Shown here: one piece after another, positions 27,431 through 64,000 of the stretch
Layout: each line of letters opens with the position of its first letter
Position numbering within the stretch: the first letter of the stretch is position 1
Assembly (NCBI GenBank): GCA_965637545.1
Contig: OZ281497.1
Span: 22,072,001-22,136,000, forward strand
Source of the DNA: Phallusia mammillata
Lineage: Eukaryota
DNA length: 64,000 bases
Direction: 5' to 3'
Notes under the pieces: model-generated
Told to the model about the DNA's origin: nothing
Seen by the model: the letters and a program-made list of their open reading frames with translations, nothing else
Database searches by the model: none
Translations under genes and position numbers: made by a program

Positions 27431-27464
27431 CATTCTAAGTCACATGGCTGGCAAACAGACCAAC

Positions 27465-35733: not shown

Positions 35734-36597
35734 CATCAGATCACATGGTTATACTTGTAAAGCTTTCTCAATTTTAAACAGAAAGGAAAAATAAACAAAT
35801 ACCAACAGATTTTTAGGGGCAAAAACGAACAATAACGACATTAGAGGCCAACTTTTAAAAGGCAAATTTGCTTGATTCACGAGACATGTTTATTACCCCA
35901 AACCACAAAATTGTGAAGTGAACATGTGTTAAAGCCTAACTTTACCATGCAAAAACCGTTCAAGAAAGTAATAATAGTTTCCTAAGGTGGAAATGAACCC
36001 AATCCGTAATTAAATGCAGCAGCGAAGTGAAAAACGTATTTTTGTGTCTCGGGTGACACCTACCCGGAGGACAAAATTTTGGTCAAAATCTTGAGCAACT
36101 AAAACGGATGAAAACACACACCAGCAATCACCTATAAAAGTTGAGGCAAACTGAAATTGTCGTAGTTGGTGTCTAGGTATAAATTTCTTCTAAAATACAA
36201 AAATACCTAAAACCTACTCAAGTGTTGTACACGTAGGTCGAAAACGAATTCAAGCCAGTAGCAATACTTCGCCCATACTTCTGTATGGCAGATGTTTGTG
36301 ATATTGTCGTTTGCGGACATAATTGTAATTGTACATCATGAAAAAAATATTTAATAAAATAACTAAGGGTATTTTTGCGTAGACAAGTTTGGAAAACGTT
36401 ATCATTTATACATTTGAACTAATAAATAACCTATTACGTTATACCTGTGGTCTTCAAACTTGTTTTTGTCAACTTTTAACTATCAGGTAGACGAAGTATC
36501 CGTCAGTTTGGTGCTCTTTAATTCCGTTTAATTCTCTTGAATGTTACATTTATGCAGGCAGGTCCGACTTCGTAAATAGGATCCTTAGGATCTAAAC

Positions 36598-37019
36598 CAG
36601 TGAACCTCAACCGCGGCTCTCAGGGCCGCATGTGGCTTCCGACTACGTATTTTGTGCCCCTCAACAGACCTCAGAAATTTAATAAAGATTATTATAACTA
36701 TGAATAGCAACAAATCTCGATGTTTCAGACATTAGTATATTTAAAAGTCTATATTGGAGTATATTTAAACACTCCAACCCATTCAGTCTAATGGCGAGAA
36801 TAATTACGTACAGCGGTTAACCGTTATCGGCCTGTGTCGAATAAGTCAGAATCAGTATAGGCTTTCTGCAGATAAGTGTTATTGACAAAAAGTAGCTATT
36901 GATATTCTTGTTGTTCGGTGTTATGCTGCATTCGCTTTTATTTCGTTTTTTTTGCGGCTCCTCATATACTTCAAAAACTACCTTTTGGCCCCGACTACAA
37001 AAAAGGTTGATAACGATTA
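36598..37019. mobile_element. hAT MITE, duplicate of 18533-18954
   Basis: Perfect TSD atctaaac on both sides. Confidence 0.78.
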
Positions 37020-37517
37020 ATCTAAACCGTTTATTTAGTCAGAGTCCACATTAAGGTAATAATACGACAGATTCAAACTTTTGATTTAACACAACTAGCA
37101 TCACACGCTTTACCAACTTAACACACTAACTTCAGAATTCCAATGCAAAGCGCTACAAAACTGCCACACAAAAAATGCGTTGATTACAAACACGCTATTC
37201 GCACGAGGACAAACGTTCTGAAGGCAAAAAACGTCTATAGGCAAATAAAAGCAACAATGTTAGTAGCGATAGCTAAAAACACAAACAGGAATATAGCAAT
37301 AATACAGATTAGGGGTTGATATTTTTTGAAAACAAATGCTGTCCCATAATCAAGTGTACATATTTTTTGGAGCATAAATAAATCAAGAAGTCCAATAACA
37401 CTAAATGCACACTAAGGATGGTTTAATTGAAGCATTTTTGTACAGCATGAAAAATATCAGGTCCAAAAACAAAAAATATCAGAAAGATGAACATTTTTTC
37501 TCTCCATTCATACAAGT

Positions 37518-40500
37518 TTAGTATGTTTCAAAGAAGAATGGTTCTATGTAAAGTATGCTAAACACCTCAAGTACAAACCAACAATAGAGCCAGTTCTCAA
37601 CAGTAACAAGGTTGGAACCGCTGGTTGTTGAATTACTGGTTGTTGTTGGTGATATTGAGGATTGAGTTGCAGTCAGTTCCTGGGAGAGGGTCTCTGGATA
37701 GTAAAACGCTTGAAATAACCACTGCGCTATCACAAATTAGACATTACTTTCATATGTAACAACTATAATCTATTGTAAAAAACGCTCAACTCCTTGGTAA
37801 ATATATATTTACACATAACCTAATTGCAAAAGCATTATATTATATATTTGGAACAAGTCGCATAATGTGCAACAGCGCTGGTTTTATCTGCGACTTAATG
37901 GTTTACCAGTTGTATCTGGCTGGTTTGTTGCTGGTGACCCACTGTGAGGAATTGGTTTACTGATTTCCCGGTTACTGGTTGATTCTGCATCGCTGCTTGT
38001 TGCATGACTGGTTTGTAATAATTCTATTGTTGTTAATGGTTGATTTGTGTTCATAGGTGACATGGTTGGTTCTTCACACATATTACCTGGATAAGTTATT
38101 TGTAACAAAAAAAGTTCATCAATAAGGTTGAATGCTAAATAAGTATAAAGCTACAAAAAGTAGATTCTGCTATACCAAATATTTGGCTTCGGTACAAAGA
38201 CATTGTGTCAAGTTCGGCTTAGAGACAAAACTATAATAAACAAACCAATGTCACAAATAGGAATGACTTCGGAGTAAATGTCTGTAAGAACAGCAGCAAG
38301 TTGTTCAAAGGATTCCACCGTGGTTACTCTTTCATAAGATACTCCTCCGTTGGCGCTGATTTGAAGTTGCCCATAGTCTACTCCTGTGCCAATTCCAATG
38401 ACGTAGACGGTGACGTTGTTGGATTGCGTCAGGGCAAAACTTAAAACAAAATATTTTTATTAGAAACTTTTCCCTGTAATATTACTATTCTTTATTTCCT
38501 AACAATATTTGATATTGCACTATTGATAATATGTCAGAAAAAGGTTTAGAATTCAGTGCTGGGGAATTTTAGTGGTGGGGGAAGGCCACTCAACATCTTA
38601 TCATCACTCGTGTAGGCCGCATACTATTTCACAGGCCTAGGACAGTGGTGTTTATTAATTTATAGAATGGTTGTTCTGTAATTTTTTCTTGCATAGTCGT
38701 GGGACTTACGGTTCAAGCTGAATAAAGATAAATAAACTTGCCACGACATTTCCTCCTTCACTGTACATTAGGGTTAATTTTAGCCATGAGCTCTTGGTAG
38801 TCCTACGCGGAAGTCGCCTTGTGTGCCACTACGGGACCATTGGCTCTAGTTTAAACACCGCTGCCCTAGAACTTATAAAACAGTAATGGGAAATCAGAAA
38901 AAAATACATTTTTGTTTGATTTTCTTTGACTGGTGCAGCGTGCAATATCAAGATCCTAAAATGTATTTGGGCATCGAAGGCCGCACTTAGTGCCCTAAAA
39001 ACCGCATGCGGTCTCAGTTTCCCAATCCCTGGTTTGGACTTTGGCAAATCTTACAACCTGGTATGAAGCAGGTTGGAATCTGTCGCTGATCCATCGGTGA
39101 TGAGAATTAGGATCTTTTTGGCGAAATCTGCCCTTGATGATTGATTGAAATCGATCTACACAAAATGAAAATACAGTAAGATGGTTAAATAAATTAAACG
39201 CCTGTAGCAACATAGATATGTATGTACTTCTTGGTCCTTGTCGAGTTCCTTTGGTTTGAAAACCGGTATTGAAAACAACAATTCACCGAACTTACTTTCA
39301 CGGCACGTTCGATCGCCCTTGCAGTATAAGTATTAGCTGCTTTCAAATGCTTCATATTCATGAGAGATTCTTGTAAACATCGGAACGTTTTGCATTCACC
39401 AAGTTTAGTAGGCGATTGATAGTGACTGGGACTCGTTGATAAATAAGTGAGGCTGAAAGCAAATTTTGAAAATAGTGTATCAATTAAAAAAAAATTTAGA
39501 AATGAAAGGTTACTTTCTGCCGTTTAAGTGGCCATATTGAAGAACTCCAACTTGTAGGCAGGAACAAATGGAACGCGTCAAGCTTAAAGACGAATTAAGA
39601 AGACCTTCTCTGATTGTTTCAAAACTTGAAGAGCTTATTGAATTCGAAGAGTCCACAAGTAAAATCAGATCAGTGCTGTTTGGTTTGGACGACGGGTCTA
39701 CAATGATAGAGTTACAACCGGTTTGTTGGTGGCCAATAACTCGCTGGTGGAATTTATTTTACCAGTTGTAGGTACTTTGATGGTCGTTGTTGACTCATTT
39801 ACGGGTGTTGGTTTGTCGGTGGTTATTGGCGTGAAGGTTGGTGTTTGCTCTGTTGTAAAATTCTTGCAGTCTGTATAACAACATTTATAATCCTTACAGG
39901 TCTATACGATTTCAAGCACTTTTTTATCTTCGTTGTTTAACCGGTCAAGGTTTTTAGCGGTGGTACAGTTTATAAAGTATGTTTTTGTACAGCAAGAAAC
40001 CAACCTGTGTCACAGTGTGGAACGACATGGGAGTAAATGTTAGTAAGAATGGCTGCAAGCTGCTCAAAGGATCCCACTGTGGTTACTCTTTCATCAGATA
40101 TTCCTCCATTGGCGCTTATTTGAAGTTGTTCATGACTTACTCTTGTGCCAATTCCAATGACGTAGACGGTGACGTTGTTGGATTGAGTCAGGGCAAAACT
40201 TAAAACGAAATATTCTTGCACGTAACTTTTCGCTGTAATATCACGATTCTTTATTTCTTATCAATATTTAAATTGCATTATTGACAATGTGTCAGGAAAA
40301 AGGTTTAAACTTTGCAAAATCTTGCAACCTGGTATGAAGCAGTTTGTAATCTGTCGCTTCTCCATCGGTGATGAGAACTAGGACCTTATTGGCAAAATCT
40401 GCCCTTAATGATTGATTGAAATTGATCTAAACGAAATGAAAATACAGTCAACTTGTACTTTATAAGATGGTTAAATAAATTTTACACTTATAGCTACATA

Positions 40501-43500
40501 TCTGTTTGTGTACTTCTTGGCCCTTATCAAATTTCTTCTGTTTGAATACCGGTATTAAAAACAACAAGTAACCGAACTTACTTTCACGGCACGTTCGATC
40601 GCCCTTGCAGTATAGGTATTGGCTGCTTTTAAGTGCATCATATTAATAAAAGAGTCTTGTAAACATCGGATTGTTTTGCATTCACCAAGTTCAGTAGGCG
40701 ATTGATAGTGACTTGGGCTCGTTGATAAATAAGTAAGGCTGAAAGCAAATTTTGAAAATAGTGTATGAATTAAAAAAAATTAGAAATGAAAGGTTACTTT
40801 CTGCCGTTTAATTGGCCATATTGAAGAACTCCAACTTGTAGGCAGGAACAAATCGAACGCGTGAAGCTTAAAGACGAATTAAGAAGACCTTCTCTGATTG
40901 TTTCAAAACTTGAAGAGCTTATTAAATTCGAAGAGTCCACAAGTAAAATCAGATCAGTGCTGTTTGGTTTGGACGACGGGTCTACAATGATAGAGTTACA
41001 ACCGGTTTGTTGGTGGCTAATAACTCGCTGGTGGAAGTTATTTTACCAGTTGTAGGTACTTTGATGGTCGTTGTTGACTCATTTACGGGTGTTGGTTTGT
41101 CGGTGGTTATTGGTGTGAAGGTTGGTGTTTGCTCTGTTGTAAAATTCTTGCAGTCTGTATAACAACAGTTATAATCCTTACAGGTCTATACGATTTCAAG
41201 CACTTTTTTATCTTCGTTGTTTAACCGGTCAAGGTTTTTAGCGGTGGTACAGTTTATAAAGTATGTTTTTGTACAGCAAGAAACGAACCTGTGTCACAGT
41301 GTGGAACGACATGGGAGTAAATGTTAGTAAGAATGGCTGCAAGCTGCTCAAAGGATCCCACTGTGGTTACTCTTTCATCAGATATTCCTCCATTGGCGCT
41401 TATTTGAAGTTGTTCATGACTTACTCTTGTGCCAATTCCAATGGCGTAGACGGTGACGTTGTTGGATTGAGTCAGGGCAAAACTTAAAACGAAATATTCT
41501 TGCAAGTAACTTTTCGCTGTAATATCACGATTCTTTATTTCTTATCAATATTTAAATTGCATTATTGACAATGTGTCAGGAAAAAGGTTTAAACTTTGCA
41601 AAATCTTGCAACCTGGTATGAAGCAGTTTGTAATCTGTCGCTGCTCCATCGGTGATGAGAACTAGGACCTTATTGGCAAAATCTGCCCTTAATGATTGAT
41701 TGAAATTGATCTAAACAAAATGAAAATACAGTCAACTTGTACTTTATAAGATGGTTAAATAAATTTCACACTTATAGCTACATATCTGTTTCTGTACTTC
41801 TTGGCCCTTATCAAATTTCTTCTGTTTGAACACCGGTATTTAAAACAACAAGTAACCGAACTTACTTTCACGGCACGTTCGATCGCCCTTGCAGTATAGG
41901 TATTAGCTGCTTTTAAATGCTTCATATTCATGAGAGAGTCTTGTAAACATCGGATTGTTTTGCATTCACCAAGTTCAGTTGGCGATTGATAGTGACTTGG
42001 GCTCGTTGATAAATAAGTGAGGCTGAAAGCAAATTTTGAAAATAGTGTATGAATTAAAAAAAATTTAGAAATGAAAGGTTACTTTCTGCCGTTTAAGTGG
42101 CCATATTGAAGAACTCCAACTTGTAGGCAGGAACAAATCGAACGCGTGAAGCTTAAAGACGAATTAAGAAGACCTTCTCTGATTGTTTCAAAACTTGAAG
42201 AGCTTATTGAATTCGAAGAGTCCACAAGTAAAATCAGATCAGTGCTGTTTGGTTTGGGCGACGGGTCTACAATGATAGAGTTACAACCGGTTTGTTGGTG
42301 GCCAATAACTCGCTGGTGGAATTTATTTTACCAGTTGTAGGTACTTTGATGGTCGTTGTTGACTCATTTACGGGTGTTGGTTTGTCAGTGGTTATTGGTG
42401 TGAAGGTTGGTGTTTGCTCTGTTGTAAAATTCTTGCAGTCTGTATAACAACAGTTATAATCCATACAGGTCTATACGATTTCAAGCACTTTTTTATCTTC
42501 GTTGTTTAACCGGTCAAGGTTTTTAGCGGTGGTACAGTTTATAAAGTATGTTTTTGTACAGCAAGAAACCAACCTGTGTCACAATGAGGAACGACATGGG
42601 AGTAAATGTTAGTAAGAATGGCTGCAAGCTGCTCAAAGGATCCCACTGTGGTTACTCTTTCATCAGATATTCCTCCATTGGCGCTTATTTGAAGTTGCTC
42701 ATGACTTACTCTTGTGCCAATTCCAATGACGTAGACGGTGACGTTGTTGGATTGAGTCAGGGCAAAACTTAAAACGAAATAGTCTTGTAAGAAACTTTTC
42801 GCGGTAATATCACGATTCTTTATTTCTTATCAATATTTAAATTGCATTATTGACAATGTGTCAGGACAAGGTTTAAACTTTGCAAAATCTTGCAACCTGG
42901 TATGAAGCAGTTTGTAATCTGTCGCTGCTCCATCGGTGATGAGAACTAGGACCTTATTGGCAAAATCTGCCCTTAATGATTGATTGAAATTGATCTAAAC
43001 AAAATGAAAATACAGTCAACTTGTACTTTATAAGATGGTTAAATAAATTTCACACTTGCAGCTACATATCTGTTTGTGTACTTCTTGGCCCTTATCAAAT
43101 TTCTTCTGTTTGAACACCGGTATTTAAAACAACAAGTAACCGAACTTACTTTCACGGCACGTTCGATCGCCCTTGCAGTATAGGTATTGGCTGCTTTCAA
43201 ATGCTTCATATTCATAAAAGAGTCTTGCAAACATTGGATTGTTTTGCATTCACCAAGTTCAGTAGGCGATTGATAGTGAATTGGGCTCGTTGATAAATAA
43301 GTGAGGCTGAAAGCAAATTTTGAAAATAGTGTATGAATTAAAAAAAATTAGAAATGAAAGGTTACTTTCTGCCGTTTAACTGGCCATATTGAAGAACTCC
43401 AACTTGTAGGCAGGAACAAATCGAACGCGTGAAGCTTAAAGACGAATTAAGAAGACCTTCTCTGATTGTTTCAAAACTTGAAGAGCTTATTGAATTCGAA

Positions 43501-49500: not shown

Positions 49501-52500
49501 CTTGGCCCCTATCAAATTTCTTCTGTTTGAACACCGGTATTTAAAACAACAAGTAACCGAACTTACTTTCACGGCACGTTCGATCGCCCTTGCAGTATAG
49601 GTATTGGCTGCTTTCAAATGCTTCATATTCATAAAAGAGTCTTGCAAACATTGGATTGTTTTGCATTCACCAAGTTCAGTAGGCGATTGATAGTGAATTG
49701 GGCTCGTTGATAAATAAGTGAGGCTGAAAGCAAATTTTGAAAATAGTGTATGAATTAAAAAAAATCATTTAGGAATGAAAGGTTACTTTCTGCCGTTTAA
49801 TTGGCCATATTGAAGAACTCCAACTTGTAGGCAGGAACAAATGGAACGCGTGAAGCTTAAAGACGAATTAAGAAGACCTTCTCTGATTGTTTCAAAACTT
49901 GAAGAGCTTATTGAATTCGAAGAGTCCACAAGTAAAATCAGATCAGTGCTGTTTGGTTTGGGCGACGGGTCTACAATGATAGAGTTACAACCGGTTTGTT
50001 GGTGGCTAATAACTCGCTGGTGGAAGTTATTTTACCAGTTGTAGGTACTTTGATGGTCGTTGTTGACTCATTTACGGGTGTTGGTTTGTCGGTGGTTGTT
50101 GGTGTGAAGGTTGGTGTTTGCTCTGTTGTAAAATTCTTGCAGTCTGTATAACAACAGGTATATTCCTTTCAGGTCTATACGATTTCAAGCACTTTTTTAT
50201 CTTCGTTGTTTAACCGGTCAAGGTTTATAGCGGTGGTACAGTTTATAAAGTATGTTTTTGTACAGCAAGAAACCAACCTGTGTCACAGTGTGGAACGACA
50301 TGAGAGTAAATGCTAGTAAGAATGGATGGAAGTTGTTCAAAGGATCCCACTGTGGTTACTCTTTCATCAGATATTCCTCCATTGGCGCTTCTTTGAAGTT
50401 GCTCATGGCTTACTCTTGTGCCAATTCCAATGGCGTAGACGGTGACGTTGTTGGATTGAGTCAGGGCAAAACTTAAAACGAAATAGTCTTGTAAGAAACT
50501 TTTCGCTGTAATATCACGATTCTTTATTTCTTATCAATATTTAAATTGCATTATTGGCAATGTGTCAGGACAAGGTTTAAACTTTGCAAAATCTTGCAAC
50601 CTGGTATGAAGCAGTTTGTAATCTGTCGCTGCTCCATCGGTGATGAGAACTAGGACCTTATTGGCAAAATCTGCTCTTAATGATTGATTGAAGTTGATCT
50701 AAACAAAATGAAAATACAGTCAACTTGTACTTTATAAGATGGTTAAATAAATTTCACACTTGCAGCTACATATCTGTTTGTGTACTTCTTGGCCCCTATC
50801 AAATTTCTTCTGTTTGAACACCGGTATTTAAAACAACAAGTAACCGAACTTACTTTCACGGCACGTTCGATCGCCCTTGCAGTATAGGTATTGGCTGCTT
50901 TCAAATGCTTCATATTCATAAAAGAGTCTTGCAAACATTGGATTGTTTTGCATTCACCAAGTTCAGTAGGCGATTGATAGTGAATTGGGCTCGTTGATAA
51001 ATAAGTGAGGCTGAAAGCAAATTTTGAAAATAGTGTATGAATTAAAAAAAATCATTTAGGAATGAAAGGTTACTTTCTGCCGTTTAATTGGCCATATTGA
51101 AGAACTCCAACTTGTAGGCAGGAACAAATCGAACGCGTGAAGCTTAAAGACGAATTAAGAAGACCTTCTCTGATTGTTTCAAAACTTGAAGAGCTTATTG
51201 AATTCGAAGAGTCCACAAGTAAAATCAGATCAGTGCTGTTTGGTTTGGGCGACGGGTCTACAATGATAGAGTTACAACCGGTTTGTTGGTGGCTAATAAC
51301 TCGCTGGTGGAAGTTATTTTACCAGTTGTAGGTACTTTGATGGTCGTTGTTGACTCATTTACGGGTGTTGGTTTGTCGGTGGTTGTTGGTGTGAAGGTTG
51401 GTGTTTGCTCTGTTGTAAAATTCTTGCAGTCTGTATAACAACAGGTATATTCCTTTCAGGTCTATACGATTTCAAGCACTTTTTTATCTTCGTTGTTTAA
51501 CCGGTCAAGGTTTATAGCGGTGGTACAGTTTATAAAGTATGTTTTTGTACAGCAAGAAACCAACCTGTGTCACAGTGTGGAACGACATGAGAGTAAATGC
51601 TAGTAAGAATGGATGGAAGTTGTTCAAAGGATCCCACTGTGGTTACTCTTTCATCAGATATTCCTCCATTGGCGCTTCTTTGAAGTTGCTCATGGCTTAC
51701 TCTTGTGCCAATTCCAATGGCGTAGACGGTGACGTTGTTGGATTGAGTCAGGGCAAAACTTAAAACGAAATAGTCTTGTAAGAAACTTTTCGCTGTAATA
51801 TCACGATTCTTAATTTCTTATCAATATTTGATATTGCATTATTGACAATGTGTCAGGACAAGGTTTAAACTTTGCAAAATCTTGCAACCTGGTATGAAGC
51901 AGTTTGTAATCTGTCGCTGCTCCATCGGTGATGAGAACTAGGACCTTATTGGCAAAATCTGCCCTTAATGATTGATTGAAATTGATCTAAACAAAATGAA
52001 AATACAGTCAACTTGTACTTTATAAAAAGGTTAAATAAATTTCACACTTATAGCTACATATCTGTTTGTGTACTTCTTGGCCCTTATCAAATTTCTTCTG
52101 TTTGAACACCGGTATTTAAAACAACAAGTAACCGAACTTACTTTCACGGCACGTTCGATCGCCCTTGCAGTATAGGTATTGGCTGCTTTCAAATGCTTCA
52201 TATTCATAAAAGAGTCTTGCAAACATTGGATTGTTTTGCATTCACCAAGTTCAGTAGGCGATTGATAGTGAATTGGGCTCGTTGATAAATAAGTGAGGCT
52301 GAAAGCAAATTTTGAAAATAGTGTATGAAAAAAAAAATTAGAAATGAAAGGTTACTTTCTGCCGTTTAACTGGCCATATTGAAGAACTCCAACTTGTAGG
52401 CAGGAACAAATGGAACGCGTGAAGCTTAAAGACGAATTAAGAAGGCCTTCTCTGATTGTTTCAAAACTTGAAGAGCTTATTGAATTCGAAGAGTCCACAA

Positions 52501-55500
52501 GTAAAATCAGATCAGTGCTGTTTGGTTTGTGCGACGGGTCTACAATGATAGAGTTACAACCGGTTTGTTGGTGGCTAATAACTCGCTGGTGGAAGTTATT
52601 TTACCAGTTGTAGGTACTTTGATGGTCGTTGTTGACTCATTTACGGGTGTTGGTTTGTCGGTGGTTGTTGGTGTGAAGGTTGGTGTTTGCTCTGTTGTAA
52701 AATTCTTGCAGTCTGTATAACAACAGGTATATTCCTTTCAGGTCTATACGATTTCAAGCACTTTTTTATCTTCTTTGTTTAACCGGTCACGGTTTATAGC
52801 GGTGGTACAGTTTATAAAGTATGTTTTTGTACAGCAAGAAACCAACCTGTGTCACAGTGTGGAACGACATGAGAGTAAATGTTAGTAAGAATGGATGGAA
52901 GTTGTTCAAAGGATCCCACTGTGGTTACTCTTTCATCAGATATTCCTCCATTGGCGCTTATTTGAAGTTGCTCATGGCTTACTCTTGTGCCAATTCCAAT
53001 GACGTAGACGGTGACGTTGTTGGATTGAGTCAGGGCAAAACTTAAAACGAAATAGTCTTGTAAGAAACTTTTCGCTGTAATATCACGATTCTTTATTTCT
53101 GATCAATATTTAAATTGCATTATTGACAATGTGTCAGGACAAGGTTTAAACTTTGCAAAATCTTGCAACCTGGTATGAAGCAGTTTGTAATCTGTCGCTG
53201 CTCCATCGGTGATGAGAACTAGGACCTTATTGGCAAAATCTGCCCTTAATGATTGATTGAAATTGATCTAAACAAAATGAAAATACAGTCAACTTGTACT
53301 TTATAAGATGGTTAAATAAATTTTACACTTGCAGCTACATATCTGTTTGTGTACTTCTTGGCCCTTATCAAATTTCTTCTGTTTGAACACCGGTATTTAA
53401 AACAACGAGTAACCGAACTTACTTTCACGGCACGTTCGATCGCCCTTGCAGTATAGGTATTGGCTGCTTTCAAATGCTTCATATTCATAAAAGAGTCTTG
53501 CAAACATTGGATTGTTTTGCATTCACCAAGTTCAGTAGGCGATTGATAGTGAATTGGGCTCGTTGATAAATAAGTGAGGCTGAAAGCAAATTTTGAAAAT
53601 AGTGTATGAATTAAAAAAAATCATTTAGGAATGAAAGGTTACTTTCTGCCGTTTAATTGGCCATATTGAAGAACTCCAACTTGTAGGCAGGAACAAATGG
53701 AACGCGTGAAGCTTAAAGACGAATTAAGAAGACCTTCTCTGATTGTTTCAAAACTTGAAGAGCTTATTGAATTCGAAGAGTCCACAAGTAAAATCAGATC
53801 AGTGCTGTTTGGTTTGGGCGACGGGTCTACAATGATAGAGTTACAACCGGTTTGTTGGTGGCTAATAACTCGCTGGTGGAAGTTATTTTACCAGTTGTAG
53901 GTACTTTGATGGTCGTTGTTGACTCATTTACGGGTGTTGGTTTGTCGGTGGTTGTTGGTGTGAAGGTTGGTGTTTGCTCTGTTGTAAAATTCTTGCAGTC
54001 TGTATAACAACAGGTATATTCCTTTCAGGTCTATACGATTTCAAGCACTTTTTTATCTTCGTTGTTTATCCGGTCAAGGTTTATAGCTGTGGTACAGTTT
54101 ATAAAGTATGTTTTTGTACAGCAAGAAACCAACCTGTGTCACAGTGTGGAACGACATGAGAGTAAATGCTAGTAAGAATGGATGGAAGTTGTTCAAAGGA
54201 TCCCACTGTGGTTACTCTTTCATCAGATATTCCTCCATTGGCGCTTATTTGAAGTTGCTCATGGCTTACTCTTGTGCCAATTCCAATGGCGTAGACGGTG
54301 ACGTTGTTGGATTGAGTCAGGGCAAAACTTAAAACGAAATAGTCTTGTAAGAAACTTTTCGCTGTAATATCACGATTCTTAATTTCTTATCAATATTTGA
54401 TATTGCATTATTGACAATGTGTCAGGACAAGGTTTAAACTTTGCAAAATCTTGCAACCTGGTATGAAGCAGTTTGTAATCTGTCGCTGCTCCATCGGTGA
54501 TGAGAACTAGGACCTTATTGGCAAAATCTGCCCTTAATGATTGATTGAAATTGATCTAAACAAAATGAAAATACAGTCAACTTGTACTTTATAAAAAGGT
54601 TAAATAAATTTCACACTTATAGCTACATATCTGTTTGTGTACTTCTTGGCCCTTATCAAATTTCTTCTGTTTGAACACCGGTATTTAAAACAACAAGTAA
54701 CCGAACTTACTTTCACGGCACGTTCGATCGCCCTTGCAGTATAGGTATTGGCTGCTTTCAAATGCTTCATATTCATAAAAGAGTCTTGCAAACATTGGAT
54801 TGTTTTGCATTCACCAAGTTCAGTAGGCGATTGATAGTGAATTGGGCTCGTTGATAAATAAGTGAGGCTGAAAGCAAATTTTGAAAATAGTGTATGAAAA
54901 AATCATTTAGAAATGAAAGGTTACTTTCTGCCGTTTAACTGGCCATATTGAAGAACTCCAACTTGTAGGCAGGAACAAATGGAACGCGTGAAGCTCAAAG
55001 ACGAATTAAGAAGACCTTCTCTGATTGTTTCGAAACTTGAAGAGCTTATTGAATTCGAAGAGTCCACAAGTAAAATCAGATCAGTGCTGTTTGGTTTGGG
55101 CGACGGGTCTACAATGATAGAGTTACAACCGGTTTGTTGGTGGCTAATAACTCGCTGGTGGAAGTTATTTTACCAGTTGTAGGTACTTTGATGGTCGTTG
55201 TTGACTCATTTACGGGTGTTGGTTTGTCGGTGGTTGTTGGTGTGAAGGTTGGTGTTTGCTCTGTTGTAAAATTCTTGCAGTCTGTATAACAACAGGTATA
55301 TTCCTTTCAGGTCTATACGATTTCAAGCACTTTTTTATCTTCGTTGTTTAACCGGTCAAGGTTTATAGCGGTGGTACAGTTTATAAAGTATGTTTTTGTA
55401 CAGCAAGAAACCAACCTGTGTCACAGTGTGGAACGACATGAGAGTAAATGTTAGTAAGAATGGATGGAAGTTGTTCAAAGGATCCCACTGTGGTTACTCT

Positions 55501-58500
55501 TTCATCAGATATTCCTCCATTGGCGCTTATTTGAAGTTGCTCATGGCTTACTCTTGTGCCAATTCCAATGACGTAGACGGTGACGTTGTTGGATTGAGTC
55601 AGGGCAAAACTTAAAACGAAATAGTCTTGTAAGAAACTTTTCGCTGTAATATCACGATTCTTTATTTCTTATCAATATTTAAATTGCATTATTGACAATG
55701 TGTCAGGACAAGGTTTAAACTTTGCAAAATCTTGCAACCTGGTATGAAGCAGTTTGTAATCTGTCGCTGCTCCATCGGTGATGAGAACTAGGACCTTATT
55801 GGCAAAATCTGCCCTTAATGATTGATTGAAATTGATCTAAACAAAATGAAAATACAGTCAACTTGTACTTTATAAGATGGTTAAATAAATTTTACACTTG
55901 CAGCTACATATCTGTTTGTGTACTTCTTGGCCCTTATCAAATTTCTTCTGTTTGAACACCGGTATTTAAAACAACAAGTAACCGAACTTACTTTCACGGC
56001 ACGTTCGATCGCCCTTGCAGTATAGGTATTGGCTGCTTTCAAATGCTTCATATTCATAAAAGAGTCTTGCAAACATTGGATTGTTTTGCATTCACCAAGT
56101 TCAGTAGGCGATTGATAGTGAATTGGGCTCGTTGATAAATAAGTGAGGCTGAAAGCAAATTTTGAAAATAGTGTATGAATTAAAAAAAATCATTTAGGAA
56201 TGAAAGGTTACTTTCTGCCGTTTAATTGGCCATATTGAAGAACTCCAACTTGTAGGCAGGAACAAATGGAACGCGTGAAGCTTAAAGACGAATTAAGAAG
56301 ACCTTCTCTGATTGTTTCAAAACTTGAAGAGCTTATTGAATTCGAAGAGTCCACAAGTAAAATCAGATCAGTGCTGTTTGGTTTGGGCGACGGGTCTACA
56401 ATGATAGAGTTACAACCGGTTTGTTGGTGGCTAATAACTCGCTGGTGGAAGTTATTTTACCAGTTGTAGGTACTTTGATGGTCGTTGTTGACTCATTTAC
56501 GGGTGTTGGTTTGTCGGTGGTTGTTGGTGTGAAGGTTGGTGTTTGCTCTGTTGTAAAATTCTTGCAGTCTGTATAACAACAGGTATATTCCTTTCAGGTC
56601 TATACGATTTCAAGCACTTTTTTATCTTCGTTGTTTAACCGGTCAAGGTTTATAGCTGTGGTACAGTTTATAAAGTATGTTTTTGTACAGCAAGAAACCA
56701 ACCTGTGTCACAGTGTGGAACGACATGAGAGTAAATGCTAGTAAGAATGGATGGAAGTTGTTCAAAGGATCCCACTGTGGTTACTCTTTCATCAGATATT
56801 CCTCCATTGGCGCTTATTTGAAGTTGCTCATGGCTTACTCTTGTGCCAATTCCAATGGCGTAGACGGTGACGTTGTTGGATTGAGTCAGGGCAAAACTTA
56901 AAACGAAATAGTCTTGTAAGAAACTTTTCGCTGTAATATCACGATTCTTAATTTCTTATCAATATTTGATATTGCATTATTGACAATGTGTCAGGACAAG
57001 GTTTAAACTTTGCAAAATCTTGCAACCTGGTATGAAGCAGTTTGTAATCTGTCGCTGCTCCATCGGTGATGAGAACTAGGACCTTATTGGCAAAATCTGC
57101 CCTTAATGATTGATTGAAATTGATCTAAACAAAATGAAAATACAGTCAACTTGTACTTTATAAAAAGGTTAAATAAATTTCACACTTATAGCTACATATC
57201 TGTTTGTGTACTTCTTGGCCCTTATCAAATTTCTTCTGTTTGAACACCGGTATTTAAAACAACAAGTAACCGAACTTACTTTCACGGCACGTTCGATCGC
57301 CCTTGCAGTATAGGTATTGGCTGCTTTCAAATGCTTCATATTCATAAAAGAGTCTTGCAAACATTGGATTGTTTTGCATTCACCAAGTTCAGTAGGCGAT
57401 TGATAGTGAATTGGGCTCGTTGATAAATAAGTGAGGCTGAAAGCAAATTTTGAAAATAGTGTATGAAAAAATCATTTAGAAATGAAAGGTTACTTTCTGC
57501 CGTTTAACTGGCCATATTGAAGAACTCCAACTTGTAGGCAGGAACAAATGGAACGCGTGAAGCTCAAAGACGAATTAAGAAGACCTTCTCTGATTGTTTC
57601 GAAACTTGAAGAGCTTATTGAATTCGAAGAGTCCACAAGTAAAATCAGATCAGTGCTGTTTGGTTTGGGCGACGGGTCTACAATGATAGAGTTACAACCG
57701 GTTTGTTGGTGGCTAATAACTCGCTGGTGGAAGTTATTTTACCAGTTGTAGGTACTTTGATGGTCGTTGTTGACTCATTTACGGGTGTTGGTTTGTCGGT
57801 GGTTGTTGGTGTGAAGGTTGGTGTTTGCTCTGTTGTAAAATTCTTGCAGTCTGTATAACAACAGGTATATTCCTTTCAGGTCTATACGATTTCAAGCACT
57901 TTTTTATCTTCGTTGTTTAACCGGTCAAGGTTTATAGCGGTGGTACAGTTTATAAAGTATGTTTTTGTACAGCAAGAAACCAACCTGTGTCACAGTGTGG
58001 AACGACATGAGAGTAAATGTTAGTAAGAATGGATGGAAGTTGTTCAAAGGATCCCACTGTGGTTACTCTTTCATCAGATATTCCTCCATTGGCGCTTATT
58101 TGAAGTTGCTCATGGCTTACTCTTGTGCCAATTCCAATGACGTAGACGGTGACGTTGTTGGATTGAGTCAGGGCAAAACTTAAAACGAAATAGTCTTGTA
58201 AGAAACTTTTCGCTGTAATATCACGATTCTTTATTTCTTATCAATATTTAAATTGCATTATTGACAATGTGTCAGGACAAGGTTTAAACTTTGCAAAATC
58301 TTGCAACCTGGTATGAAGCAGTTTGTAATCTGTCGCTGCTCCATCGGTGATGAGAACTAGGACCTTATTGGCAAAATCTGCCCTTAATGATTGATTGAAA
58401 TTGATCTAAACAAAATGAAAATACAGTCAACTTGTACTTTATAAGATGGTTAAATAAATTTCACACTTGCAGCTACATATCTGTTTGTGTACTTCTTGGC

Positions 58501-61500
58501 CCTTATCAAATTTCTTCTGTTTGAACACCGGTATTTAAAACAACAAGTAACCGAACTTACTTTCACGGCACGTTCGATCGCCCTTGCAGTATAGGTATTG
58601 GCTGCTTTCAAATGCTTCATATTCATAAAAGAGTCTTGCAAACATTGGATTGTTTTGCATTCACCAAGTTCAGTAGGCGATTGATAGTGAATTGGGCTCG
58701 TTGATAAATAAGTGAGGCTGAAAGCAAATTTTGAAAATAGTGTATGAAAAAAAATTTAGAAATGAAAGGTTACTTTCTGCCGTTTAACTGGCCATATTGA
58801 AGAACTCCAACTTGTAGGCAGGAACAAATGGAACGCGTGAAGCTTAAAGACGAATTAAGAAGACCTTCTCTGATTGTTTCAAAACTTGAAGAGCTTATTG
58901 AATTCGAAGAGTCCACAAGTAAAATCAGATCAGTGCTGTTTGGTTTGGGCGACGGGTCTACAATGATAGAGTTACAACCGGTTTGTTGGTGGCTAATAAC
59001 TCGCTGGTGGAAGTTATTTTACCAGTTGTAGGTACTTTGATGGTCGTTGTTGACTCATTTACGGGTGTTGGTTTGTCGGTGGTTGTTGGTGTGAAGGTTG
59101 GTGTTTGCTCTGTTGTAAAATTCTTGCAGTCTGTATAACAACAGGTATATTCCTTTCAGGTCTATACGATTTCAAGCACTTTTTTATCTTCGTTGTTTAA
59201 CCGGTCAAGGTTTATAGCGGTGGTACAGTTTATAAAGTATGTTTTTGTACAGCAAGAAACCAACCTGTGTCACAGTGTGGAACGACATGAGAGTAAATGT
59301 TAGTAAGAATGGATGGAAGTTGTTCAAAGGATCCCACTGTGGTTACTCTTTCATCAGATATTCCTCCATTGGCGCTTATTTGAAGTTGCTCATGGCTTAC
59401 TCTTGTGCCAATTCCAATGACGTAGACGGTGACGTTGTTGGATTGAGTCAGGGCAAAACTTAAAACGAAATAGTCTTGTAAGAAACTTTTCGCTGTAATA
59501 TCACGATTCTTTATTTCTTATCAATATTTAAATTGCATTATTGACAATGTGTCAGGACAAGGTTTAAACTTTGCAAAATCTTGCAACCTGGTATGAAGCA
59601 GTTTGTAATCTGTCGCTGCTCCATCGGTGATGAGAACTAGGACCTTATTGGCAAAATCTGCCCTTAATGATTGATTGAAATTGATCTAAACAAAATGAAA
59701 ATACAGTCAACTTGTACTTTATAAGATGGTTAAATAAATTTCACACTTGCAGCTACATATCTGTTTGTGTACTTCTTGGCCCTTATCAAATTTCTTCTGT
59801 TTGAACACCGGTATTTAAAACAACAAGTAACCGAACTTACTTTCACGGCACGTTCGATCGCCCTTGCAGTATAGGTATTGGCTGCTTTCAAATGCTTCAT
59901 ATTCATAAAAGAGTCTTGCAAACATTGGATTGTTTTGCATTCACCAAGTTCAGTAGGCGATTGATAGTGAATTGGGCTCGTTGATAAATAAGTGAGGCTG
60001 AAAGCAAATTTTGAAAATAGTGTATGAAAAAAAATTTAGAAATGAAAGGTTACTTTCTGCCGTTTAACTGGCCATATTGAAGAACTCCAACTTGTAGGCA
60101 GGAACAAATGGAACGCGTGAAGCTTAAAGACGAATTAAGAAGACCTTCTCTGATTGTTTCAAAACTTGAAGAGCTTATTGAATTCGAAGAGTCCACAAGT
60201 AAAATCAGATCAGTGCTGTTTGGTTTGGGCGACGGGTCTACAATGATAGAGTTACAACCGGTTTGTTGATGGTGGCTAATAACTCGCTGATGGAAGGTAT
60301 TTTACCAGTTGTAGGTACTTTGATGGTCGTTGTTGACTCATTTACGGGTGTTGGTTTGTCGGTGGTTATTGGTGTGAAGGTTGGTGTTTGCTCTGTTGTA
60401 AAATTCTTGCAGTCTGTATAACAGCAGGTATATTCCTTTCAGGTCTATACGATTTCAAGCACTTTTTTATCTTCGTTGTTTAACCGGTCAAGGTTTATAG
60501 CGGTGGTACAGTTTATAAAGTATGTTTTTGTACAGCAAGAAACCAACCTGTGTCACAGTGTGGAACGACATGAGAGTAAATGTTAGTAAGAATGGATGGA
60601 AGTTGTTCAAAGGATCCCACTGTGGTTACTCTTTCATCAGATATTCCTCCATTGGCGCTTATTTGAAGTTGCTCATGGCTTACTCTTGTGCCAATTCCAA
60701 TGACGTAGACGGTGACGTTGTTGGATTGAGTCAGGGCAAAACTTAAAACGAAATAGTCTTGTAAGAAACTTTTCGCTGTAATATCACGATTCTTTATTTC
60801 TGATCAATATTTAAATTGCATTATTGACAATGTGTCAGGACAAGGTTTAAACTTTGCAAAATCTTGCAACCTGGTATGAAGCAGTTTGTAATCTGTCGCT
60901 GCTCCATCGGTGATGAGAACTAGGACCTTATTGGCAAAATCTGCCCTTAATGATTGATTGAAATTGATCTAAACAAAATGAAAATACAGTCAACTTGTAC
61001 TTTATAAGATGGTTAAATAAATTTCACACTTGCAGCTACATATCTGTTTGTGTACTTCTTGGCCCTTATCAAATTTCTTCTGTTTGAACACCGGTATTTA
61101 AAACAACAAGTAACCGAACTTACTTTCACGGCACGTTCGATCGCCCTTGCAGTATAGGTATTGGCTGCTTTCAAATGCTTCATATTCATAAAAGAGTCTT
61201 GCAAACATTGGATTGTTTTGCATTCACCAAGTTCAGTAGGCGATTGATAGTGAATTGGGCTCGTTGATAAATAAGTGAGGCTGAAAGCAAATTTTGAAAA
61301 TAGTGTATGAAAAAATCATTTAGAAATGAAAGGTTACTTTCTGCCGTTTAACTGGCCATATTGAAGAACTCCAACTTGTAGGCAGGAACAAATGGAACGC
61401 GTGAAGCTCAAAGACGAATTAAGAAGACCTTCTCTGATTGTTTCGAAACTTGAAGAGCTTATTGAATTCGAAGAGTCCACAAGTAAAATCAGATCAGTGC

Positions 61501-64000
61501 TGTTTGGTTTGGGCGACGGGTCTACAATGATAGAGTTACAACCGGTTTGTTGGTGGCTAATAACTCGCTGGTGGAAGTTATTTTACCAGTTGTAGGTACT
61601 TTGATGGTCGTTGTTGACTCATTTACGGGTGTTGGTTTGTCGGTGGTTGTTGGTGTGAAGGTTGGTGTTTGCTCTGTTGTAAAATTCTTGCAGTCTGTAT
61701 AACAACAGGTATATTCCTTTCAGGTCTATACGATTTCAAGCACTTTTTTATCTTCGTTGTTTAACCGGTCAAGGTTTATAGCGGTGGTACAGTTTATAAA
61801 GTATGTTTTTGTACAGCAAGAAACCAACCTGTGTCACAGTGTGGAACGACATGAGAGTAAATGTTAGTAAGAATGGATGGAAGTTGTTCAAAGGATCCCA
61901 CTGTGGTTACTCTTTCATCAGATATTCCTCCATTGGCGCTTATTTGAAGTTGCTCATGGCTTACTCTTGTGCCAATTCCAATGACGTAGACGGTGACGTT
62001 GTTGGATTGAGTCAGGGCAAAACTTAAAACGAAATAGTCTTGTAAGAAACTTTTCGCTGTAATATCACGATTCTTTATTTCTGATCAATATTTAAATTGC
62101 ATTATTGACAATGTGTCAGGACAAGGTTTAAACTTTGCAAAATCTTGCAACCTGGTATGAAGCAGTTTGTAATCTGTCGCTGCTCCATCGGTGATGAGAA
62201 CTAGGACCTTATTGGCAAAATCTGCCCTTAATGATTGATTGAAATTGATCTAAACAAAATGAAAATACAGTCAACTTGTACTTTATAAGATGGTTAAATA
62301 AATTTCACACTTGCAGCTACATATCTGTTTGTGTACTTCTTGGCCCTTATCAAATTTCTTCTGTTTGAACACCGGTATTTAAAACAACAAGTAACCGAAC
62401 TTACTTTCACGGCACGTTCGATCGCCCTTGCAGTATAGGTATTGGCTGCTTTCAAATGCTTCATATTCATAAAAGAGTCTTGCAAACATTGGATTGTTTT
62501 GCATTCACCAAGTTCAGTAGGCGATTGATAGTGAATTGGGCTCGTTGATAAATAAGTGAGGCTGAAAGCAAATTTTGAAAATAGTGTATGAAAAAATCAT
62601 TTAGAAATGAAAGGTTACTTTCTGCCGTTTAACTGGCCATATTGAAGAACTCCAACTTGTAGGCAGGAACAAATGGAACGCGTGAAGCTCAAAGACGAAT
62701 TAAGAAGACCTTCTCTGATTGTTTCGAAACTTGAAGAGCTTATTGAATTCGAAGAGTCCACAAGTAAAATCAGATCAGTGCTGTTTGGTTTGGGCGACGG
62801 GTCTACAATGATAGAGTTACAACCGGTTTGTTGGTGGCTAATAACTCGCTGGTGGAAGTTATTTTACCAGTTGTAGGTACTTTGATGGTCGTTGTTGACT
62901 CATTTACGGGTGTTGGTTTGTCGGTGGTTGTTGGTGTGAAGGTTGGTGTTTGCTCTGTTGTAAAATTCTTGCAGTCTGTATAACAACAGGTATATTCCTT
63001 TCAGGTCTATACGATTTCAAGCACTTTTTTATCTTCGTTGTTTAACCGGTCAAGGTTTATAGCGGTGGTACAGTTTATAAAGTATGTTTTTGTACAGCAA
63101 GAAACCAACCTGTGTCACAGTGTGGAACGACATGAGAGTAAATGTTAGTAAGAATGGATGGAAGTTGTTCAAAGGATCCCACTGTGGTTACTCTTTCATC
63201 AGATATTCCTCCATTGGCGCTTATTTGAAGTTGCTCATGGCTTACTCTTGTGCCAATTCCAATGACGTAGACGGTGACGTTGTTGGATTGAGTCAGGGCA
63301 AAACTTAAAACGAAATAGTCTTGTAAGAAACTTTTCGCTGTAATATCACGATTCTTTATTTCTGATCAATATTTAAATTGCATTATTGACAATGTGTCAG
63401 GACAAGGTTTAAACTTTGCAAAATCTTGCAACCTGGTATGAAGCAGTTTGTAATCTGTCGCTGCTCCATCGGTGATGAGAACTAGGACCTTATTGGCAAA
63501 ATCTGCCCTTAATGATTGATTGAAATTGATCTAAACAAAATGAAAATACAGTCAACTTGTACTTTATAAGATGGTTAAATAAATTTCACACTTGCAGCTA
63601 CATATCTGTTTGTGTACTTCTTGGCCCTTATCAAATTTCTTCTGTTTGAACACCGGTATTTAAAACAACAAGTAACCGAACTTACTTTCACGGCACGTTC
63701 GATCGCCCTTGCAGTATAGGTATTGGCTGCTTTCAAATGCTTCATATTCATAAAAGAGTCTTGCAAACATTGGATTGTTTTGCATTCACCAAGTTCAGTA
63801 GGCGATTGATAGTGAATTGGGCTCGTTGATAAATAAGTGAGGCTGAAAGCAAATTTTGAAAATAGTGTATGAAAAAAAATTTAGAAATGAAAGGTTACTT
63901 TCTGCCGTTTAACTGGCCATATTGAAGAACTCCAACTTGTAGGCAGGAACAAATGGAACGCGTGAAGCTTAAAGACGAATTAAGAAGACCTTCTCTGATT
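37518..64000 (-). CDS. Giant multi-VWA extracellular protein, 5'-partial: at least 20 tandem VWA domains with Thr/Pro linkers, then a Ser/Thr stalk and hydrophobic C-terminus
   Basis: Example exons: B 45869-45713 (157 nt), C 45557-45460 (98), D 45330-45137 (194), E 45002-44895 (108), A 44829-44646 (184). All are GT-AG with compatible phases; total 741 nt = 247 aa per unit. Motifs DLILLVDSSNS, LQVGVLQYG, ANTYTARAI, KVLVLITDG, VTVYVIGIG. Terminal exons 38439-38246, 38086-37907, 37693-37518. No exonic stop or frameshift noticed by eye. Confidence 0.88.
38554..39031. mobile_element. Degenerate hAT MITE in the C-D intron of the terminal VWA unit only
   Basis: Termini cagtgctggggaa ... ttcccaatccctg. 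Flanks gtttagaa / gtttggac correspond to the empty site gtttaaac in the other units. Confidence 0.72.
39296..64000. repeat. Coding tandem array (macrosatellite), period 1280-1287 bp, >19 copies, open-ended at the window edge
   Basis: Homologous positions at 39568, 40852, 42137, 43420, 44700, 45980, 47267, 48554, 49841, 51128, 52410, 53697, 54979, 56266, 57548, 58828, 60108, 61392, 62673 and 63953. Confidence 0.98.

What the first reader, a model, noticed from the sequence alone, without database searches (positions are those of the whole stretch)
37518..64000. A macrosatellite that is one gene: at least 20 near-identical 5-exon cassettes encoding a giant poly-VWA protein
Seen in sequence: the 1.28 kb repeat has no long ORF, but its five GT-AG exons splice head to tail in frame to 247 aa. 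No unit has its own signal peptide or stop, and a single stalk/tail lies at 37.5-38.1 kb. The MIDAS (DSSNS...T...TDG) is retained, and linkers are Thr/Pro-rich with NxS/T sequons. Established: MIDAS VWA domains mediate metal-dependent adhesion (integrin I domains, matrilins, collagen VI). Inference: a >4,900-aa beads-on-a-string multivalent adhesin or matrix protein whose valency is set by repeat number. It could be masked as satellite DNA or fragmented by annotation pipelines.
Basis: partly seen in the sequence, partly recalled or inferred. Interest (0 to 1): 0.92.

Follow-up and report, generated by a model that had tools for sequence, protein, structure and literature searches.

The report
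Giant repeat-built VWA adhesion gene
A 1.28-kb DNA repeat in a sea-squirt-like genome is the body of one very large gene: each copy carries five small exons for one adhesion (VWA) domain plus a sugar-bearing spacer, and RNA evidence shows that the copies are spliced head to tail in frame.

Summary
From 38,519 to the window end there are 19 full units and one cut unit of 1,280-1,287 bp, on the minus strand. The 18 complete inner cassettes (u01-u18) are 96-99.9% alike. All have the same five exons (108+184+157+98+194 = 741 nt = 247 codons), AG/GT at every site, phase-1 borders and no stop.

One RNA-like public run holds a 771-nt contig. That is 741 + 30, a closed k=31 path of the spliced cassette. 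It carries all five predicted joints, including linker-to-A (65-nt intron). A DNA run of the same organism has none of them.

The exons match VWA domains (collagen VI alpha-3, mussel PTMP1), and the MIDAS motif is intact. The 3' end, at 38,086-37,518, has a stalk exon and a tail exon with a hydrophobic end. It is supported by homology with two neighbouring single-VWA genes but not by RNA.

The 5' end and signal peptide lie outside the window. The function, a multivalent tethered adhesin or matrix protein, is inferred.

The kind is known: LPA kringle IV-2 is a multi-exon coding repeat, and sponge and octopus genomes have annotated near-identical poly-VWA proteins. The scan's note s1-399165 covers the same array in the next window.

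The parts
39803..64000 (-). Homogeneous part of the array: units u01-u18 complete and u19 cut by the window end. Each has a 1,280-1,287 bp period and a five-exon cassette of 741 coding nt.
   Evidence: Same exon lengths, AG/GT at all sites, no stops, 96-99.9% identity. Two-unit higher-order pattern in u10-u15.
51323..51430 (-). Exon E of the example unit. It is a 108-nt Thr/Pro linker, phase 1 at both ends, and spans the unit border.
   Evidence: Sequence reading. The equivalent exon 39870-39763 is present in the spliced RNA-like contig.
51258..51322 (-). 65-nt intron between linker exon E and exon A. This is the head-to-tail joint.
   Evidence: GT..AG. The same joint, 39763 to 39697 (skips 65), is seen in run X13 and not in DNA run X1.
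51074..51257 (-). Exon A (184 nt): start of the VWA domain, with the DxSxS part of the MIDAS.
   Evidence: Pfam VWA positions 1-46. Collagen VI alpha-3 9han_C, E = 6e-10.
50854..51010 (-). Exon B (157 nt): middle of the VWA domain, with a two-Cys loop and the NTYT threonine.
   Evidence: Present in the spliced contig.
50601..50698 (-). Exon C (98 nt): the LITDG strand, which holds the MIDAS Asp.
   Evidence: Pfam VWA positions 100-118. Spliced contig.
50278..50471 (-). Exon D (194 nt): C-terminal third of the VWA domain.
   Evidence: Pfam VWA positions 127-172. D-exon profile against PTMP1 4cn8, E = 9.4e-10. The acceptor of this type is confirmed by the C-D joint in X13.
38246..39802 (-). Last, diverged cassette u00: A 39697-39514, B 39452-39296, C 39155-39058, D' 38439-38246. 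A repeat-element insert lies in the C-D intron. The cassette is intact, with 84% aa identity to the canonical cassette.
   Evidence: No stops; dN/dS 0.52 against u09.
37907..38086 (-). Stalk exon (180 nt, phase 1/1), rich in Ser, Thr and Pro. Homologous to linker exon E and to the stalk exons of the paralogs.
   Evidence: No RNA contig covers it.
37518..37693 (-). Tail exon: S/T-rich stretch, then a hydrophobic end, then the stop TAA at 37520-37518.
   Evidence: Kyte-Doolittle 15-residue maximum of 1.94 near the C-terminus. Homologous to the paralog tails.
37422..37427 (-). ATTAAA, a candidate polyadenylation signal about 90 nt after the stop.
   Evidence: Sequence reading only.

Best explanation
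The 1.28-kb tandem repeat is the body of one minus-strand gene.

**Structure.**
- Each unit is a symmetric, phase 1/phase 1 cassette of five exons.
- Four exons (A-D) encode one complete VWA domain with an intact metal-ion site (MIDAS).
- The fifth exon (E) encodes a 36-residue Thr/Pro spacer that is likely O-glycosylated.
- The donor of each E exon splices across a 65-nt intron to exon A of the next unit.
- The mRNA is therefore a 741-nt periodic reading frame. The protein is a string of at least 19-20 VWA beads on mucin-like spacers, about 4,900 residues inside the window.
- After a last, diverged cassette come a Ser/Thr/Pro stalk exon and a tail exon with a hydrophobic C-terminus. This tail is a possible GPI signal or membrane anchor.

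**Origin (inferred).** The gene probably arose from a small family built as signal peptide, one VWA domain, mucin stalk and hydrophobic tail. Two members of that family lie next to it. The segment 'A-D plus stalk exon' would have been duplicated by unequal crossing-over and has since been homogenised.

**Function (inferred).** It is probably a cell-surface-tethered or matrix protein that binds a ligand through many identical metal-dependent sites. Avidity and reach would then be set by the repeat number.
For: **Shown**
- Array and exon plan.
- All 18 cassettes are in frame without stops.
- Every length variant between units lies in an intron: 8 variants, none in the 741 exon columns, chance about 0.001.
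- Exon divergence is 1.2% and intron divergence 2.0%.
- dN/dS is 0.3-0.5 against u01, u00 and the paralogs.
- RNA-like run X13 holds a 771-nt contig (741 + 30). Its pieces are exons B, C, D, E and A, and its loose ends are the end of A and the start of B. Its joints skip 140, 618, 134 and 65 nt, all GT..AG on the minus strand. DNA run X1 has none of these joints.
- DNA run X11, from another study, holds a closed 1,311-nt contig (1,281 + 30) of the unspliced unit. This shows the tandem arrangement independently.
- VWA identity.
- Splice phases of the signal-peptide, stalk and tail exons in the paralogs fit the cassette borders.
- Exon E aligns with the stalk exons.
- A cDNA-derived Phallusia mammillata protein of the family has VWA, a Thr stalk and a hydrophobic end.

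**Inferred**
- Glycosylation, anchoring, ligand binding, and valency as the selected trait.
Against: - The 5' end and any signal-peptide exon lie outside the window.
- No RNA contig covers u00, the stalk or the tail, so the 3' end rests on homology and splice logic.
- The RNA evidence is one low-depth contig (depth 9.3) in one run whose RNA label is a guess. Short contigs cannot show that one molecule spans many cassettes.
- The tail's hydrophobic stretch contains a Glu and is followed by 8 more residues, which is atypical for a GPI signal.
- Both neighbouring paralogs carry lesions.
- With only 1-2% divergence between units, the absence of stops alone is weak evidence. About 1.8 stops would be expected by chance among 39 variable exon sites (my estimate).
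- The single exons fall below Pfam's VWA cut-off (19.6, 12 and 18.5 bits against 23.8). The joined product was not scanned.
Confidence: 0.78

Rival explanations
1. The array is a young, transcribed coding satellite without a working product. A VWA cassette would have amplified by unequal crossing-over and is spliced because its sites are intact. The locus would be decaying like its two neighbours, and no functional giant protein would be made.
For: - Both adjacent paralogs carry lesions. One has an in-frame TGA and an 8-nt tail deletion; the other has a frame change before its hydrophobic end.
- RNA depth is low.
- The hydrophobic tail is atypical.
- The 5' end was not seen.
- High identity between units means little time has passed for stops to accumulate.
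Against: - 18 of 18 cassettes and the diverged u00 are intact.
- All indels are intronic.
- Exons are less diverged than introns.
- dN/dS is 0.3-0.5, even for the older u00 and par1 comparisons.
- All 90 splice sites are kept.
Confidence: 0.13
2. The closed 771-nt contig comes from a circular RNA, or from separate one-cassette transcripts, and not from a long periodic mRNA.
For: A k=31 assembly cannot tell a 741-nt circle from a tandem 741-nt repeat.
Against: - The genome offers the forward E-to-A splice at every unit border, with a normal 65-nt GT..AG intron.
- No unit has a start signal, signal peptide, stop or poly(A) signal of its own.
Confidence: 0.04
3. The copy number is an assembly artefact: a few units were inflated.
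For: Near-identical tandem units are hard to assemble. The window ends inside the array.
Against: - The units carry an ordered pattern of variants: an edge-to-centre identity gradient and a 1282/1287 two-unit alternation.
- An independent DNA run gives a closed unit contig.
- In run X1 the word depth over the array bins is roughly 44-65 times that of the unique flank. The tool warns that this is not a copy number.
Confidence: 0.03

Closest known systems
Human LPA kringle IV type 2 repeat (PMC4378929, PMC11515395)
   Same: - A coding macrosatellite: a kb-scale unit holding whole exons, repeated in tandem tens of times.
- Units are nearly identical and in frame, so the protein grows by one domain per unit.
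   Different: - LPA has two exons per 5.5-kb unit; here there are five exons per 1.28 kb.
- The domain is a kringle, not VWA plus a mucin spacer.
- Copy-number polymorphism is documented for LPA and was not tested here.
Collagen VI alpha-3 N-terminal VWA array (PDB 9han_C)
   Same: - Best solved match of exon A (E = 6e-10, several domains hit).
- Many VWA domains in a row in an extracellular protein.
   Different: - The collagen VI domains are old and diverged.
- No collagen triple-helix part is seen here.
- Collagen VI has no Thr/Pro spacers between domains and no hydrophobic tail.
Mussel byssus proximal thread matrix protein 1 (PDB 4cn8)
   Same: - Best solved match of the D-exon family profile (E = 9.4e-10).
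- A secreted invertebrate matrix protein made of VWA domains. That it binds collagen is from my own knowledge.
   Different: Only two VWA domains, no repeat array, no mucin spacers.
Annotated but unstudied invertebrate poly-VWA giants: Sycon ciliatum XP_065193054, Argonauta hians GAB1600458, Branchiostoma LOC144905190, Haliotis LOC124110407
   Same: - Found with exon D alone, each with 7-12 matched stretches.
- Sycon and Argonauta carry VWA repeats that are 94-100% identical to one another.
   Different: - Only about 30% identity to this cassette.
- Other partner domains (TSP1, EGF).
- Fewer VWA copies (8-12).
- None has the VWA-linker-only plan.
Abalone VERL (PMC9265791)
   Same: 22 tandem protein repeats. 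The inner ones are homogenised by concerted evolution and the end repeats are diverged, the same gradient as seen here.
   Different: ZP-N repeats of an egg coat protein; no VWA domain.
Small tunicate VWA-stalk-hydrophobic-tail family (P. mammillata CAB3257162, the two paralogs in this window, loci L001 and L002)
   Same: - Same four-exon VWA plan.
- Shared NN(I/V)TVYAIG(I/V)G...SANGG signature.
- Same stalk and tail exons.
   Different: Those genes have one VWA domain. Here the VWA-plus-stalk segment is amplified at least 20-fold.

Membership tests
VWA domain (Pfam PF00092) | Match to the family profile over the whole domain | tested here: inconclusive
   - Exons A, C and D hit profile positions 1-46, 100-118 and 127-172, in order.
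- Each is below the cut-off: 19.6, 12 and 18.5 bits against 23.8.
- Independent support: exon A against collagen VI alpha-3, E = 6e-10; D-exon profile against PTMP1, E = 9.4e-10, and vWF A3, about 1e-3.
VWA domain with MIDAS | DxSxS, a downstream Thr and a later Asp (TDG) at the expected places | tested here: met
   - DSSNS at cassette residues 16-20 aligns with the DGSNN site of collagen VI.
- NTYT lies at residues 102-105 and ITDG at 132-135.
- All are invariant in the 18 cassettes.
- This is motif level only; metal binding was not tested.
Multi-exon coding tandem repeat (LPA KIV-2 type) | The unit contains whole exons with matching splice phases, so that units join in frame | tested here: met
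   Phase 1 at both cassette borders, 741 nt per unit. The spliced joint is seen in RNA-like contigs.
Multi-exon coding tandem repeat (LPA KIV-2 type) | Copy number varies between individuals and sets protein size | not tested
Tunicate VWA-stalk-anchor family | N-terminal signal peptide exon ending in phase 1 | not testable with these tools
   It is present in both paralogs. For the giant gene it would lie beyond the window end.
Tunicate VWA-stalk-anchor family | C-terminal hydrophobic segment after a small-residue site (GPI-type signal) | tested here: inconclusive
   - S-G-S is followed by a 16-residue hydrophobic stretch (KD maximum 1.94).
- That stretch has an internal Glu and an 8-residue extension.
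- No GPI predictor was available.
Collagen VI | Gly-X-Y triple-helical region after the VWA domains | tested here: not met
   No such exon lies between the last cassette and the stop. The gene resembles only the VWA array of collagen VI.
Gel-forming mucins | VWD/C8/TIL assemblies and a cystine knot; the PTS repeats lie in one large exon | tested here: not met
   Only VWA (A-type) and short Thr/Pro exons are present in the window. The 5' end was not seen.

The most novel reading that the evidence does not exclude
The repeat number is polymorphic, so individuals make adhesins of different valency and length. In addition, the 65-nt E-A intron stays open in the linker frame until the TAG of its own acceptor. 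It could therefore act as a built-in truncation point at every unit: retaining any one of these introns would release a shorter, untethered form. One locus would then give a tunable set of tethered and soluble multivalent VWA proteins. The origin of such a gene from a single-domain GPI-type gene would be readable in the same window.
Probability: 0.15. Interest if true: 0.7.

Novelty: new member of a known kind. Interest (0 to 1): 0.5.

Why it matters
- It is a clean case of a satellite-like array that is really coding sequence. Repeat masking or short-read assembly would hide a protein of roughly 5,000-8,000 residues.
- No close protein was found in a library of 1.84 billion representatives.
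- The locus also shows how such a gene is born. The single-domain relatives, the diverged end unit and the homogenised core sit side by side.
- If the copy number varies, it offers a natural experiment on how valency tunes metal-dependent adhesion in a chordate relative.
- The principle is already known from LPA, DMBT1-type genes and other repeat giants, so this adds a case and does not change a concept.

Tried and rejected
- **Alternative acceptors for exon D** (50505 and 50498). 50505 is excluded by splice phase, and the X13 joint selects the 50471-type acceptor over 50498.
- **The gene continuing to the VWA units at 26 and 21 kb.** Rejected: each has its own ATG and signal-peptide exon, and the tail exon at 37.5 kb ends in a stop.
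- **The search for homologous proteins with the Phallusia relative.** It returned only itself, because low-complexity Thr words filled the candidate list.
- **The look-up of encoding contigs with a window ORF.** Nothing on record.
- **Relatives in loci L001 and L002.** Each has a single VWA unit and no array within 10 kb.
- **Self-BLAST of the giant hits.** It failed twice before a windowed version worked.
- **Literature searches.** No paper on an ascidian poly-VWA or GPI-VWA family was found. One search was rejected for a term that was too long, and the macrosatellite search gave nothing useful.
- **Runs X11 and X14,** which I had hoped were RNA, proved to be genomic DNA.
- **Joined 247-residue product.** It was not sent to Pfam, structure prediction or homology search. 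Joining was done only inside scripts, to count frame, stops and substitution rates.
Full report
**1. The repeat**

Tandem Repeats Finder only picked up a small 18-nt motif recurring about every 1,283 bp. An anchor search then placed unit starts at 39,803 ... 62,908, with spacings of 1,280-1,287 bp. Aligning the units gave 96.3-99.8% identity to unit u09 for u01-u19. A first unit at 38,519-39,802 (u00) is only 76% identical. GC skew turns positive exactly over the array. The window ends inside unit u19.

The identity matrix shows two things:
- A gradient from the 3' edge (u01 96-97%) to the core (99-99.9%).
- A two-unit alternation of 1,282- and 1,287-bp variants in u10-u15. u12 and u14 are 99.9% alike, and u11 and u13 are 99.7% alike.

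This is the signature of unequal crossing-over in a real array.

**2. The cassette**

Six-frame reading of one unit shows VWA-like pieces only on the minus strand. Reading the sequence gives five exons with consensus sites and consistent phases:

| Exon | Coordinates | Length | Phase |
|---|---|---|---|
| E | 51430-51323 | 108 nt | 1 in, 1 out |
| (intron) | 51322-51258 | 65 nt | |
| A | 51257-51074 | 184 nt | ends phase 2 |
| B | 51010-50854 | 157 nt | ends phase 0 |
| C | 50698-50601 | 98 nt | ends phase 2 |
| D | 50471-50278 | 194 nt | ends phase 1 |

- Projected through the alignment, all units keep these lengths and AG/GT at every site.
- Joined inside a script only, all 18 complete cassettes are in frame with no stop, and 16 of 247 residues vary.
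- Each cassette has the DSSNS, NTYT and ITDG motifs, six Cys and seven NxS/T sites. Its 36-residue linker has 14 Thr and 5 Pro.

**3. Constraint**

- Mean pairwise divergence is 1.18% in exons and 1.99% in introns.
- 39 of 741 exon sites and 44 of 546 intron sites vary. Among the variable exon sites, 21 are silent and 18 lie in codons that change the residue.
- All eight length variants are intronic, none in exons (chance about 0.001).
- Nei-Gojobori dN/dS over exons A-D:

| Comparison | dN/dS |
|---|---|
| u09 vs u01 | 0.32 |
| u09 vs u00 | 0.52 |
| u09 vs paralog 1 | 0.34 |

The array is therefore under moderate purifying selection. The absence of stops alone would be weak evidence at this low divergence.

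**4. RNA evidence**

The run search found 20 holders in 8 studies, none on record as RNA. I laid window 36500-40060 on four runs. I chose that stretch so that it held no two full copies.

- **X13 (guessed RNA).** It holds one 771-nt contig. Its pieces are exon B (39452-39296), C (39155-39058), D (38439-38298 continuing at 40056-40005), E (39870-39763) and A (39697-39514). Its two loose ends read as the end of exon A and the start of exon B.
  - 771 = 741 + 30, which is what a k=31 assembler emits for a closed path. The spliced message is periodic with the predicted 741-nt period.
  - The joints skip 140, 618, 134 and 65 nt. All are CT..AC on the plus strand, which is GT..AG on the minus strand.
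  - The C-D joint selects the 50471-type acceptor.
- **X1 (715 million letters of DNA contigs).** It has none of these joints.
- **X11 (from another study).** It holds a 1,311-nt contig (1,281 + 30) of the unspliced unit. This is independent DNA evidence for the head-to-tail arrangement.
- **X14.** It is also genomic.
- **Depth in X1.** Word depth is about 350-390 on the unique flank and 17,000-25,000 over the array bins. The tool warns that this is not a copy number, but it argues against a handful of units (all).

Limits of this evidence:
- It is one contig in one run, at depth 9.3.
- Nothing in X13 lies on u00's own variant, the stalk or the tail.
- A contig cannot show that one molecule spans many units.

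**5. The 3' end**

- After u00, exon D' ends at 38,246 in phase 1.
- A 180-nt stalk exon (38086-37907, phase 1/1, Ser/Thr/Pro-rich) has the same kind of donor (..ACTG|GTAAA) as exon E.
- A tail exon (37693-37518) starts in phase 1. It runs through an S/T-rich stretch to a hydrophobic segment and the stop at 37520-37518.
- ATTAAA follows at 37427-37422.
- The hydrophobic stretch scores a KD maximum of 1.94. It has an internal Glu and eight further residues, so a GPI or membrane anchor is possible but not shown.

**6. Relatives in the window**

tblastn with the exon peptides found two more VWA units on the minus strand. Both are single-domain genes with the same plan:
- An ATG and signal-peptide exon ending in phase 1 (26432-26372 and 21634-21574).
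- Exons A-D.
- A stalk exon.
- A tail exon.

Paralog 2 has an in-frame TGA at the end of exon A and an 8-nt deletion before its hydrophobic end. In paralog 1, the hydrophobic end is out of frame with the S/T part. Exon E aligns with the stalk exons: it shares the leading Cys, is 52% identical to the stalk of paralog 1, and has the same donor.

I infer that the cassette is 'A-D plus stalk exon' of such a gene. It would have been amplified because both of its borders are phase 1.

**7. Relatives elsewhere**

Exon D alone, searched against 1.84 billion representative proteins, gave 25 hits and none above 55% identity.

- **Giant poly-VWA proteins.** The best hits are Sycon ciliatum (4,041 aa), Haliotis (3,005 aa), Branchiostoma (6,024 aa) and Argonauta (1,682 aa), at about 30% identity with 7-12 matched stretches each.
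  - Sycon has 9 VWA and 10 TSP1 domains, in repeats that are 96-100% alike.
  - Argonauta has 8 VWA domains that are 94-99% alike.
  - Near-identical VWA arrays inside genes therefore recur in invertebrates, and none of them has been studied.
- **Short hits at 38-55% identity.** These are exon-sized ORFs on tunicate-like contigs. One is a cDNA-derived Phallusia mammillata protein, mis-named integrin alpha-8, with VWA, a Thr stalk and a hydrophobic end.
- **Loci L001 and L002.** Each carries one VWA unit with the same exon plan and no array within 10 kb.
- **Family signature.** NN(I/V)TVYAIG(I/V)G...SANGG is conserved across the family.
- **Solved structures.** Exon A matches collagen VI alpha-3 (6e-10). 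The D-exon profile matches mussel PTMP1 (9.4e-10) and vWF A3.

The species was not verified here. The scan's notes call it Phallusia mammillata. My only evidence of my own is that the nearest named relative comes from that species.

**8. How it probably works**

Shown:
- A periodic, spliced, open message of VWA-plus-linker cassettes.

Inferred from established knowledge of MIDAS-bearing VWA domains and of Thr/Pro mucin spacers:
- A long, stiff, glycosylated string carrying at least 19-20 identical metal-dependent binding sites. The count would be about 31 if the scan's note that the array runs on for about 14.8 kb is right.
- It would be secreted through a signal peptide encoded upstream and perhaps held at the cell surface by its tail.
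- It would bind a matrix or surface ligand with high avidity.

**9. Comparison and novelty**

- The genetic design is that of LPA kringle IV-2 (PMC4378929, PMC11515395).
- The homogenised core with diverged end repeats resembles abalone VERL (PMC9265791).
- The protein design resembles the VWA array of collagen VI alpha-3 and the unstudied invertebrate giants named above.
- It is not a collagen or a gel-forming mucin, because their defining parts are absent in the window.
- I found no paper on an ascidian gene of this kind.

I rate it a new member of a known kind: real, neat and probably unannotated, but not a new principle.

Noticed in passing
window 26432-24290 (-): Paralog 1 is a single-VWA gene with its own ATG and signal-peptide exon, exons A-D (C is one codon shorter), a 126-nt stalk exon and a tail exon. 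The VWA part is intact, but the hydrophobic end lies in a different frame from the S/T part of the tail. This is either a frameshift or an assembly indel.
   Followed up: partly
window 21634-19450 (-): Paralog 2 has the same plan, but with an in-frame TGA at 21155-21153 (end of exon A) and an 8-nt deletion before the hydrophobic end. It is probably a pseudogene.
   Followed up: partly
window 51258-51322 (-) and the same intron in every unit: The 65-nt E-A intron stays open in the linker frame until the TAG that forms its own acceptor. Retaining it at any unit would add about 21 residues and then stop. No retained form was seen in the one RNA-like run.
   Followed up: partly
window 51363-59062: A two-unit higher-order repeat: 1,282-bp and 1,287-bp variants alternate. 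Like variants are 99.7-99.9% identical; unlike neighbours are 98.4-98.9% identical.
   Followed up: yes
window 38520-39030: About 490 bp of extra sequence is inserted in the C-D intron of the last cassette. Part of it (about 38,880-39,000) is extremely deep in DNA run X1 and also present in the RNA-like run, so it is a dispersed repeat element.
   Followed up: no
window 29603-31502 (-): Two adjacent long ORFs of 380 and 251 aa. The second hits DUF4218, a transposase-associated domain. This is a probable transposon between the giant gene and paralog 1.
   Followed up: partly
window 26900-27480 (-): Overlapping ORFs with a repeating Cys-rich peptide pattern (..PSKLCVLC..). This looks like a minisatellite and was not examined.
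   Followed up: no
L001 5126-10261: In an unnamed 1.06-Mb ENA contig, a single VWA unit of the same family has a hAT-type transposon (DUF4371, Dimer_Tnp_hAT) inserted in its A-B intron.
   Followed up: no
runs X12 (organism B) and X20 (organism C): Two other organisms hold 7-15% of the sampled words of the stretch, so a related array or cassette may exist in sister species.
   Followed up: no
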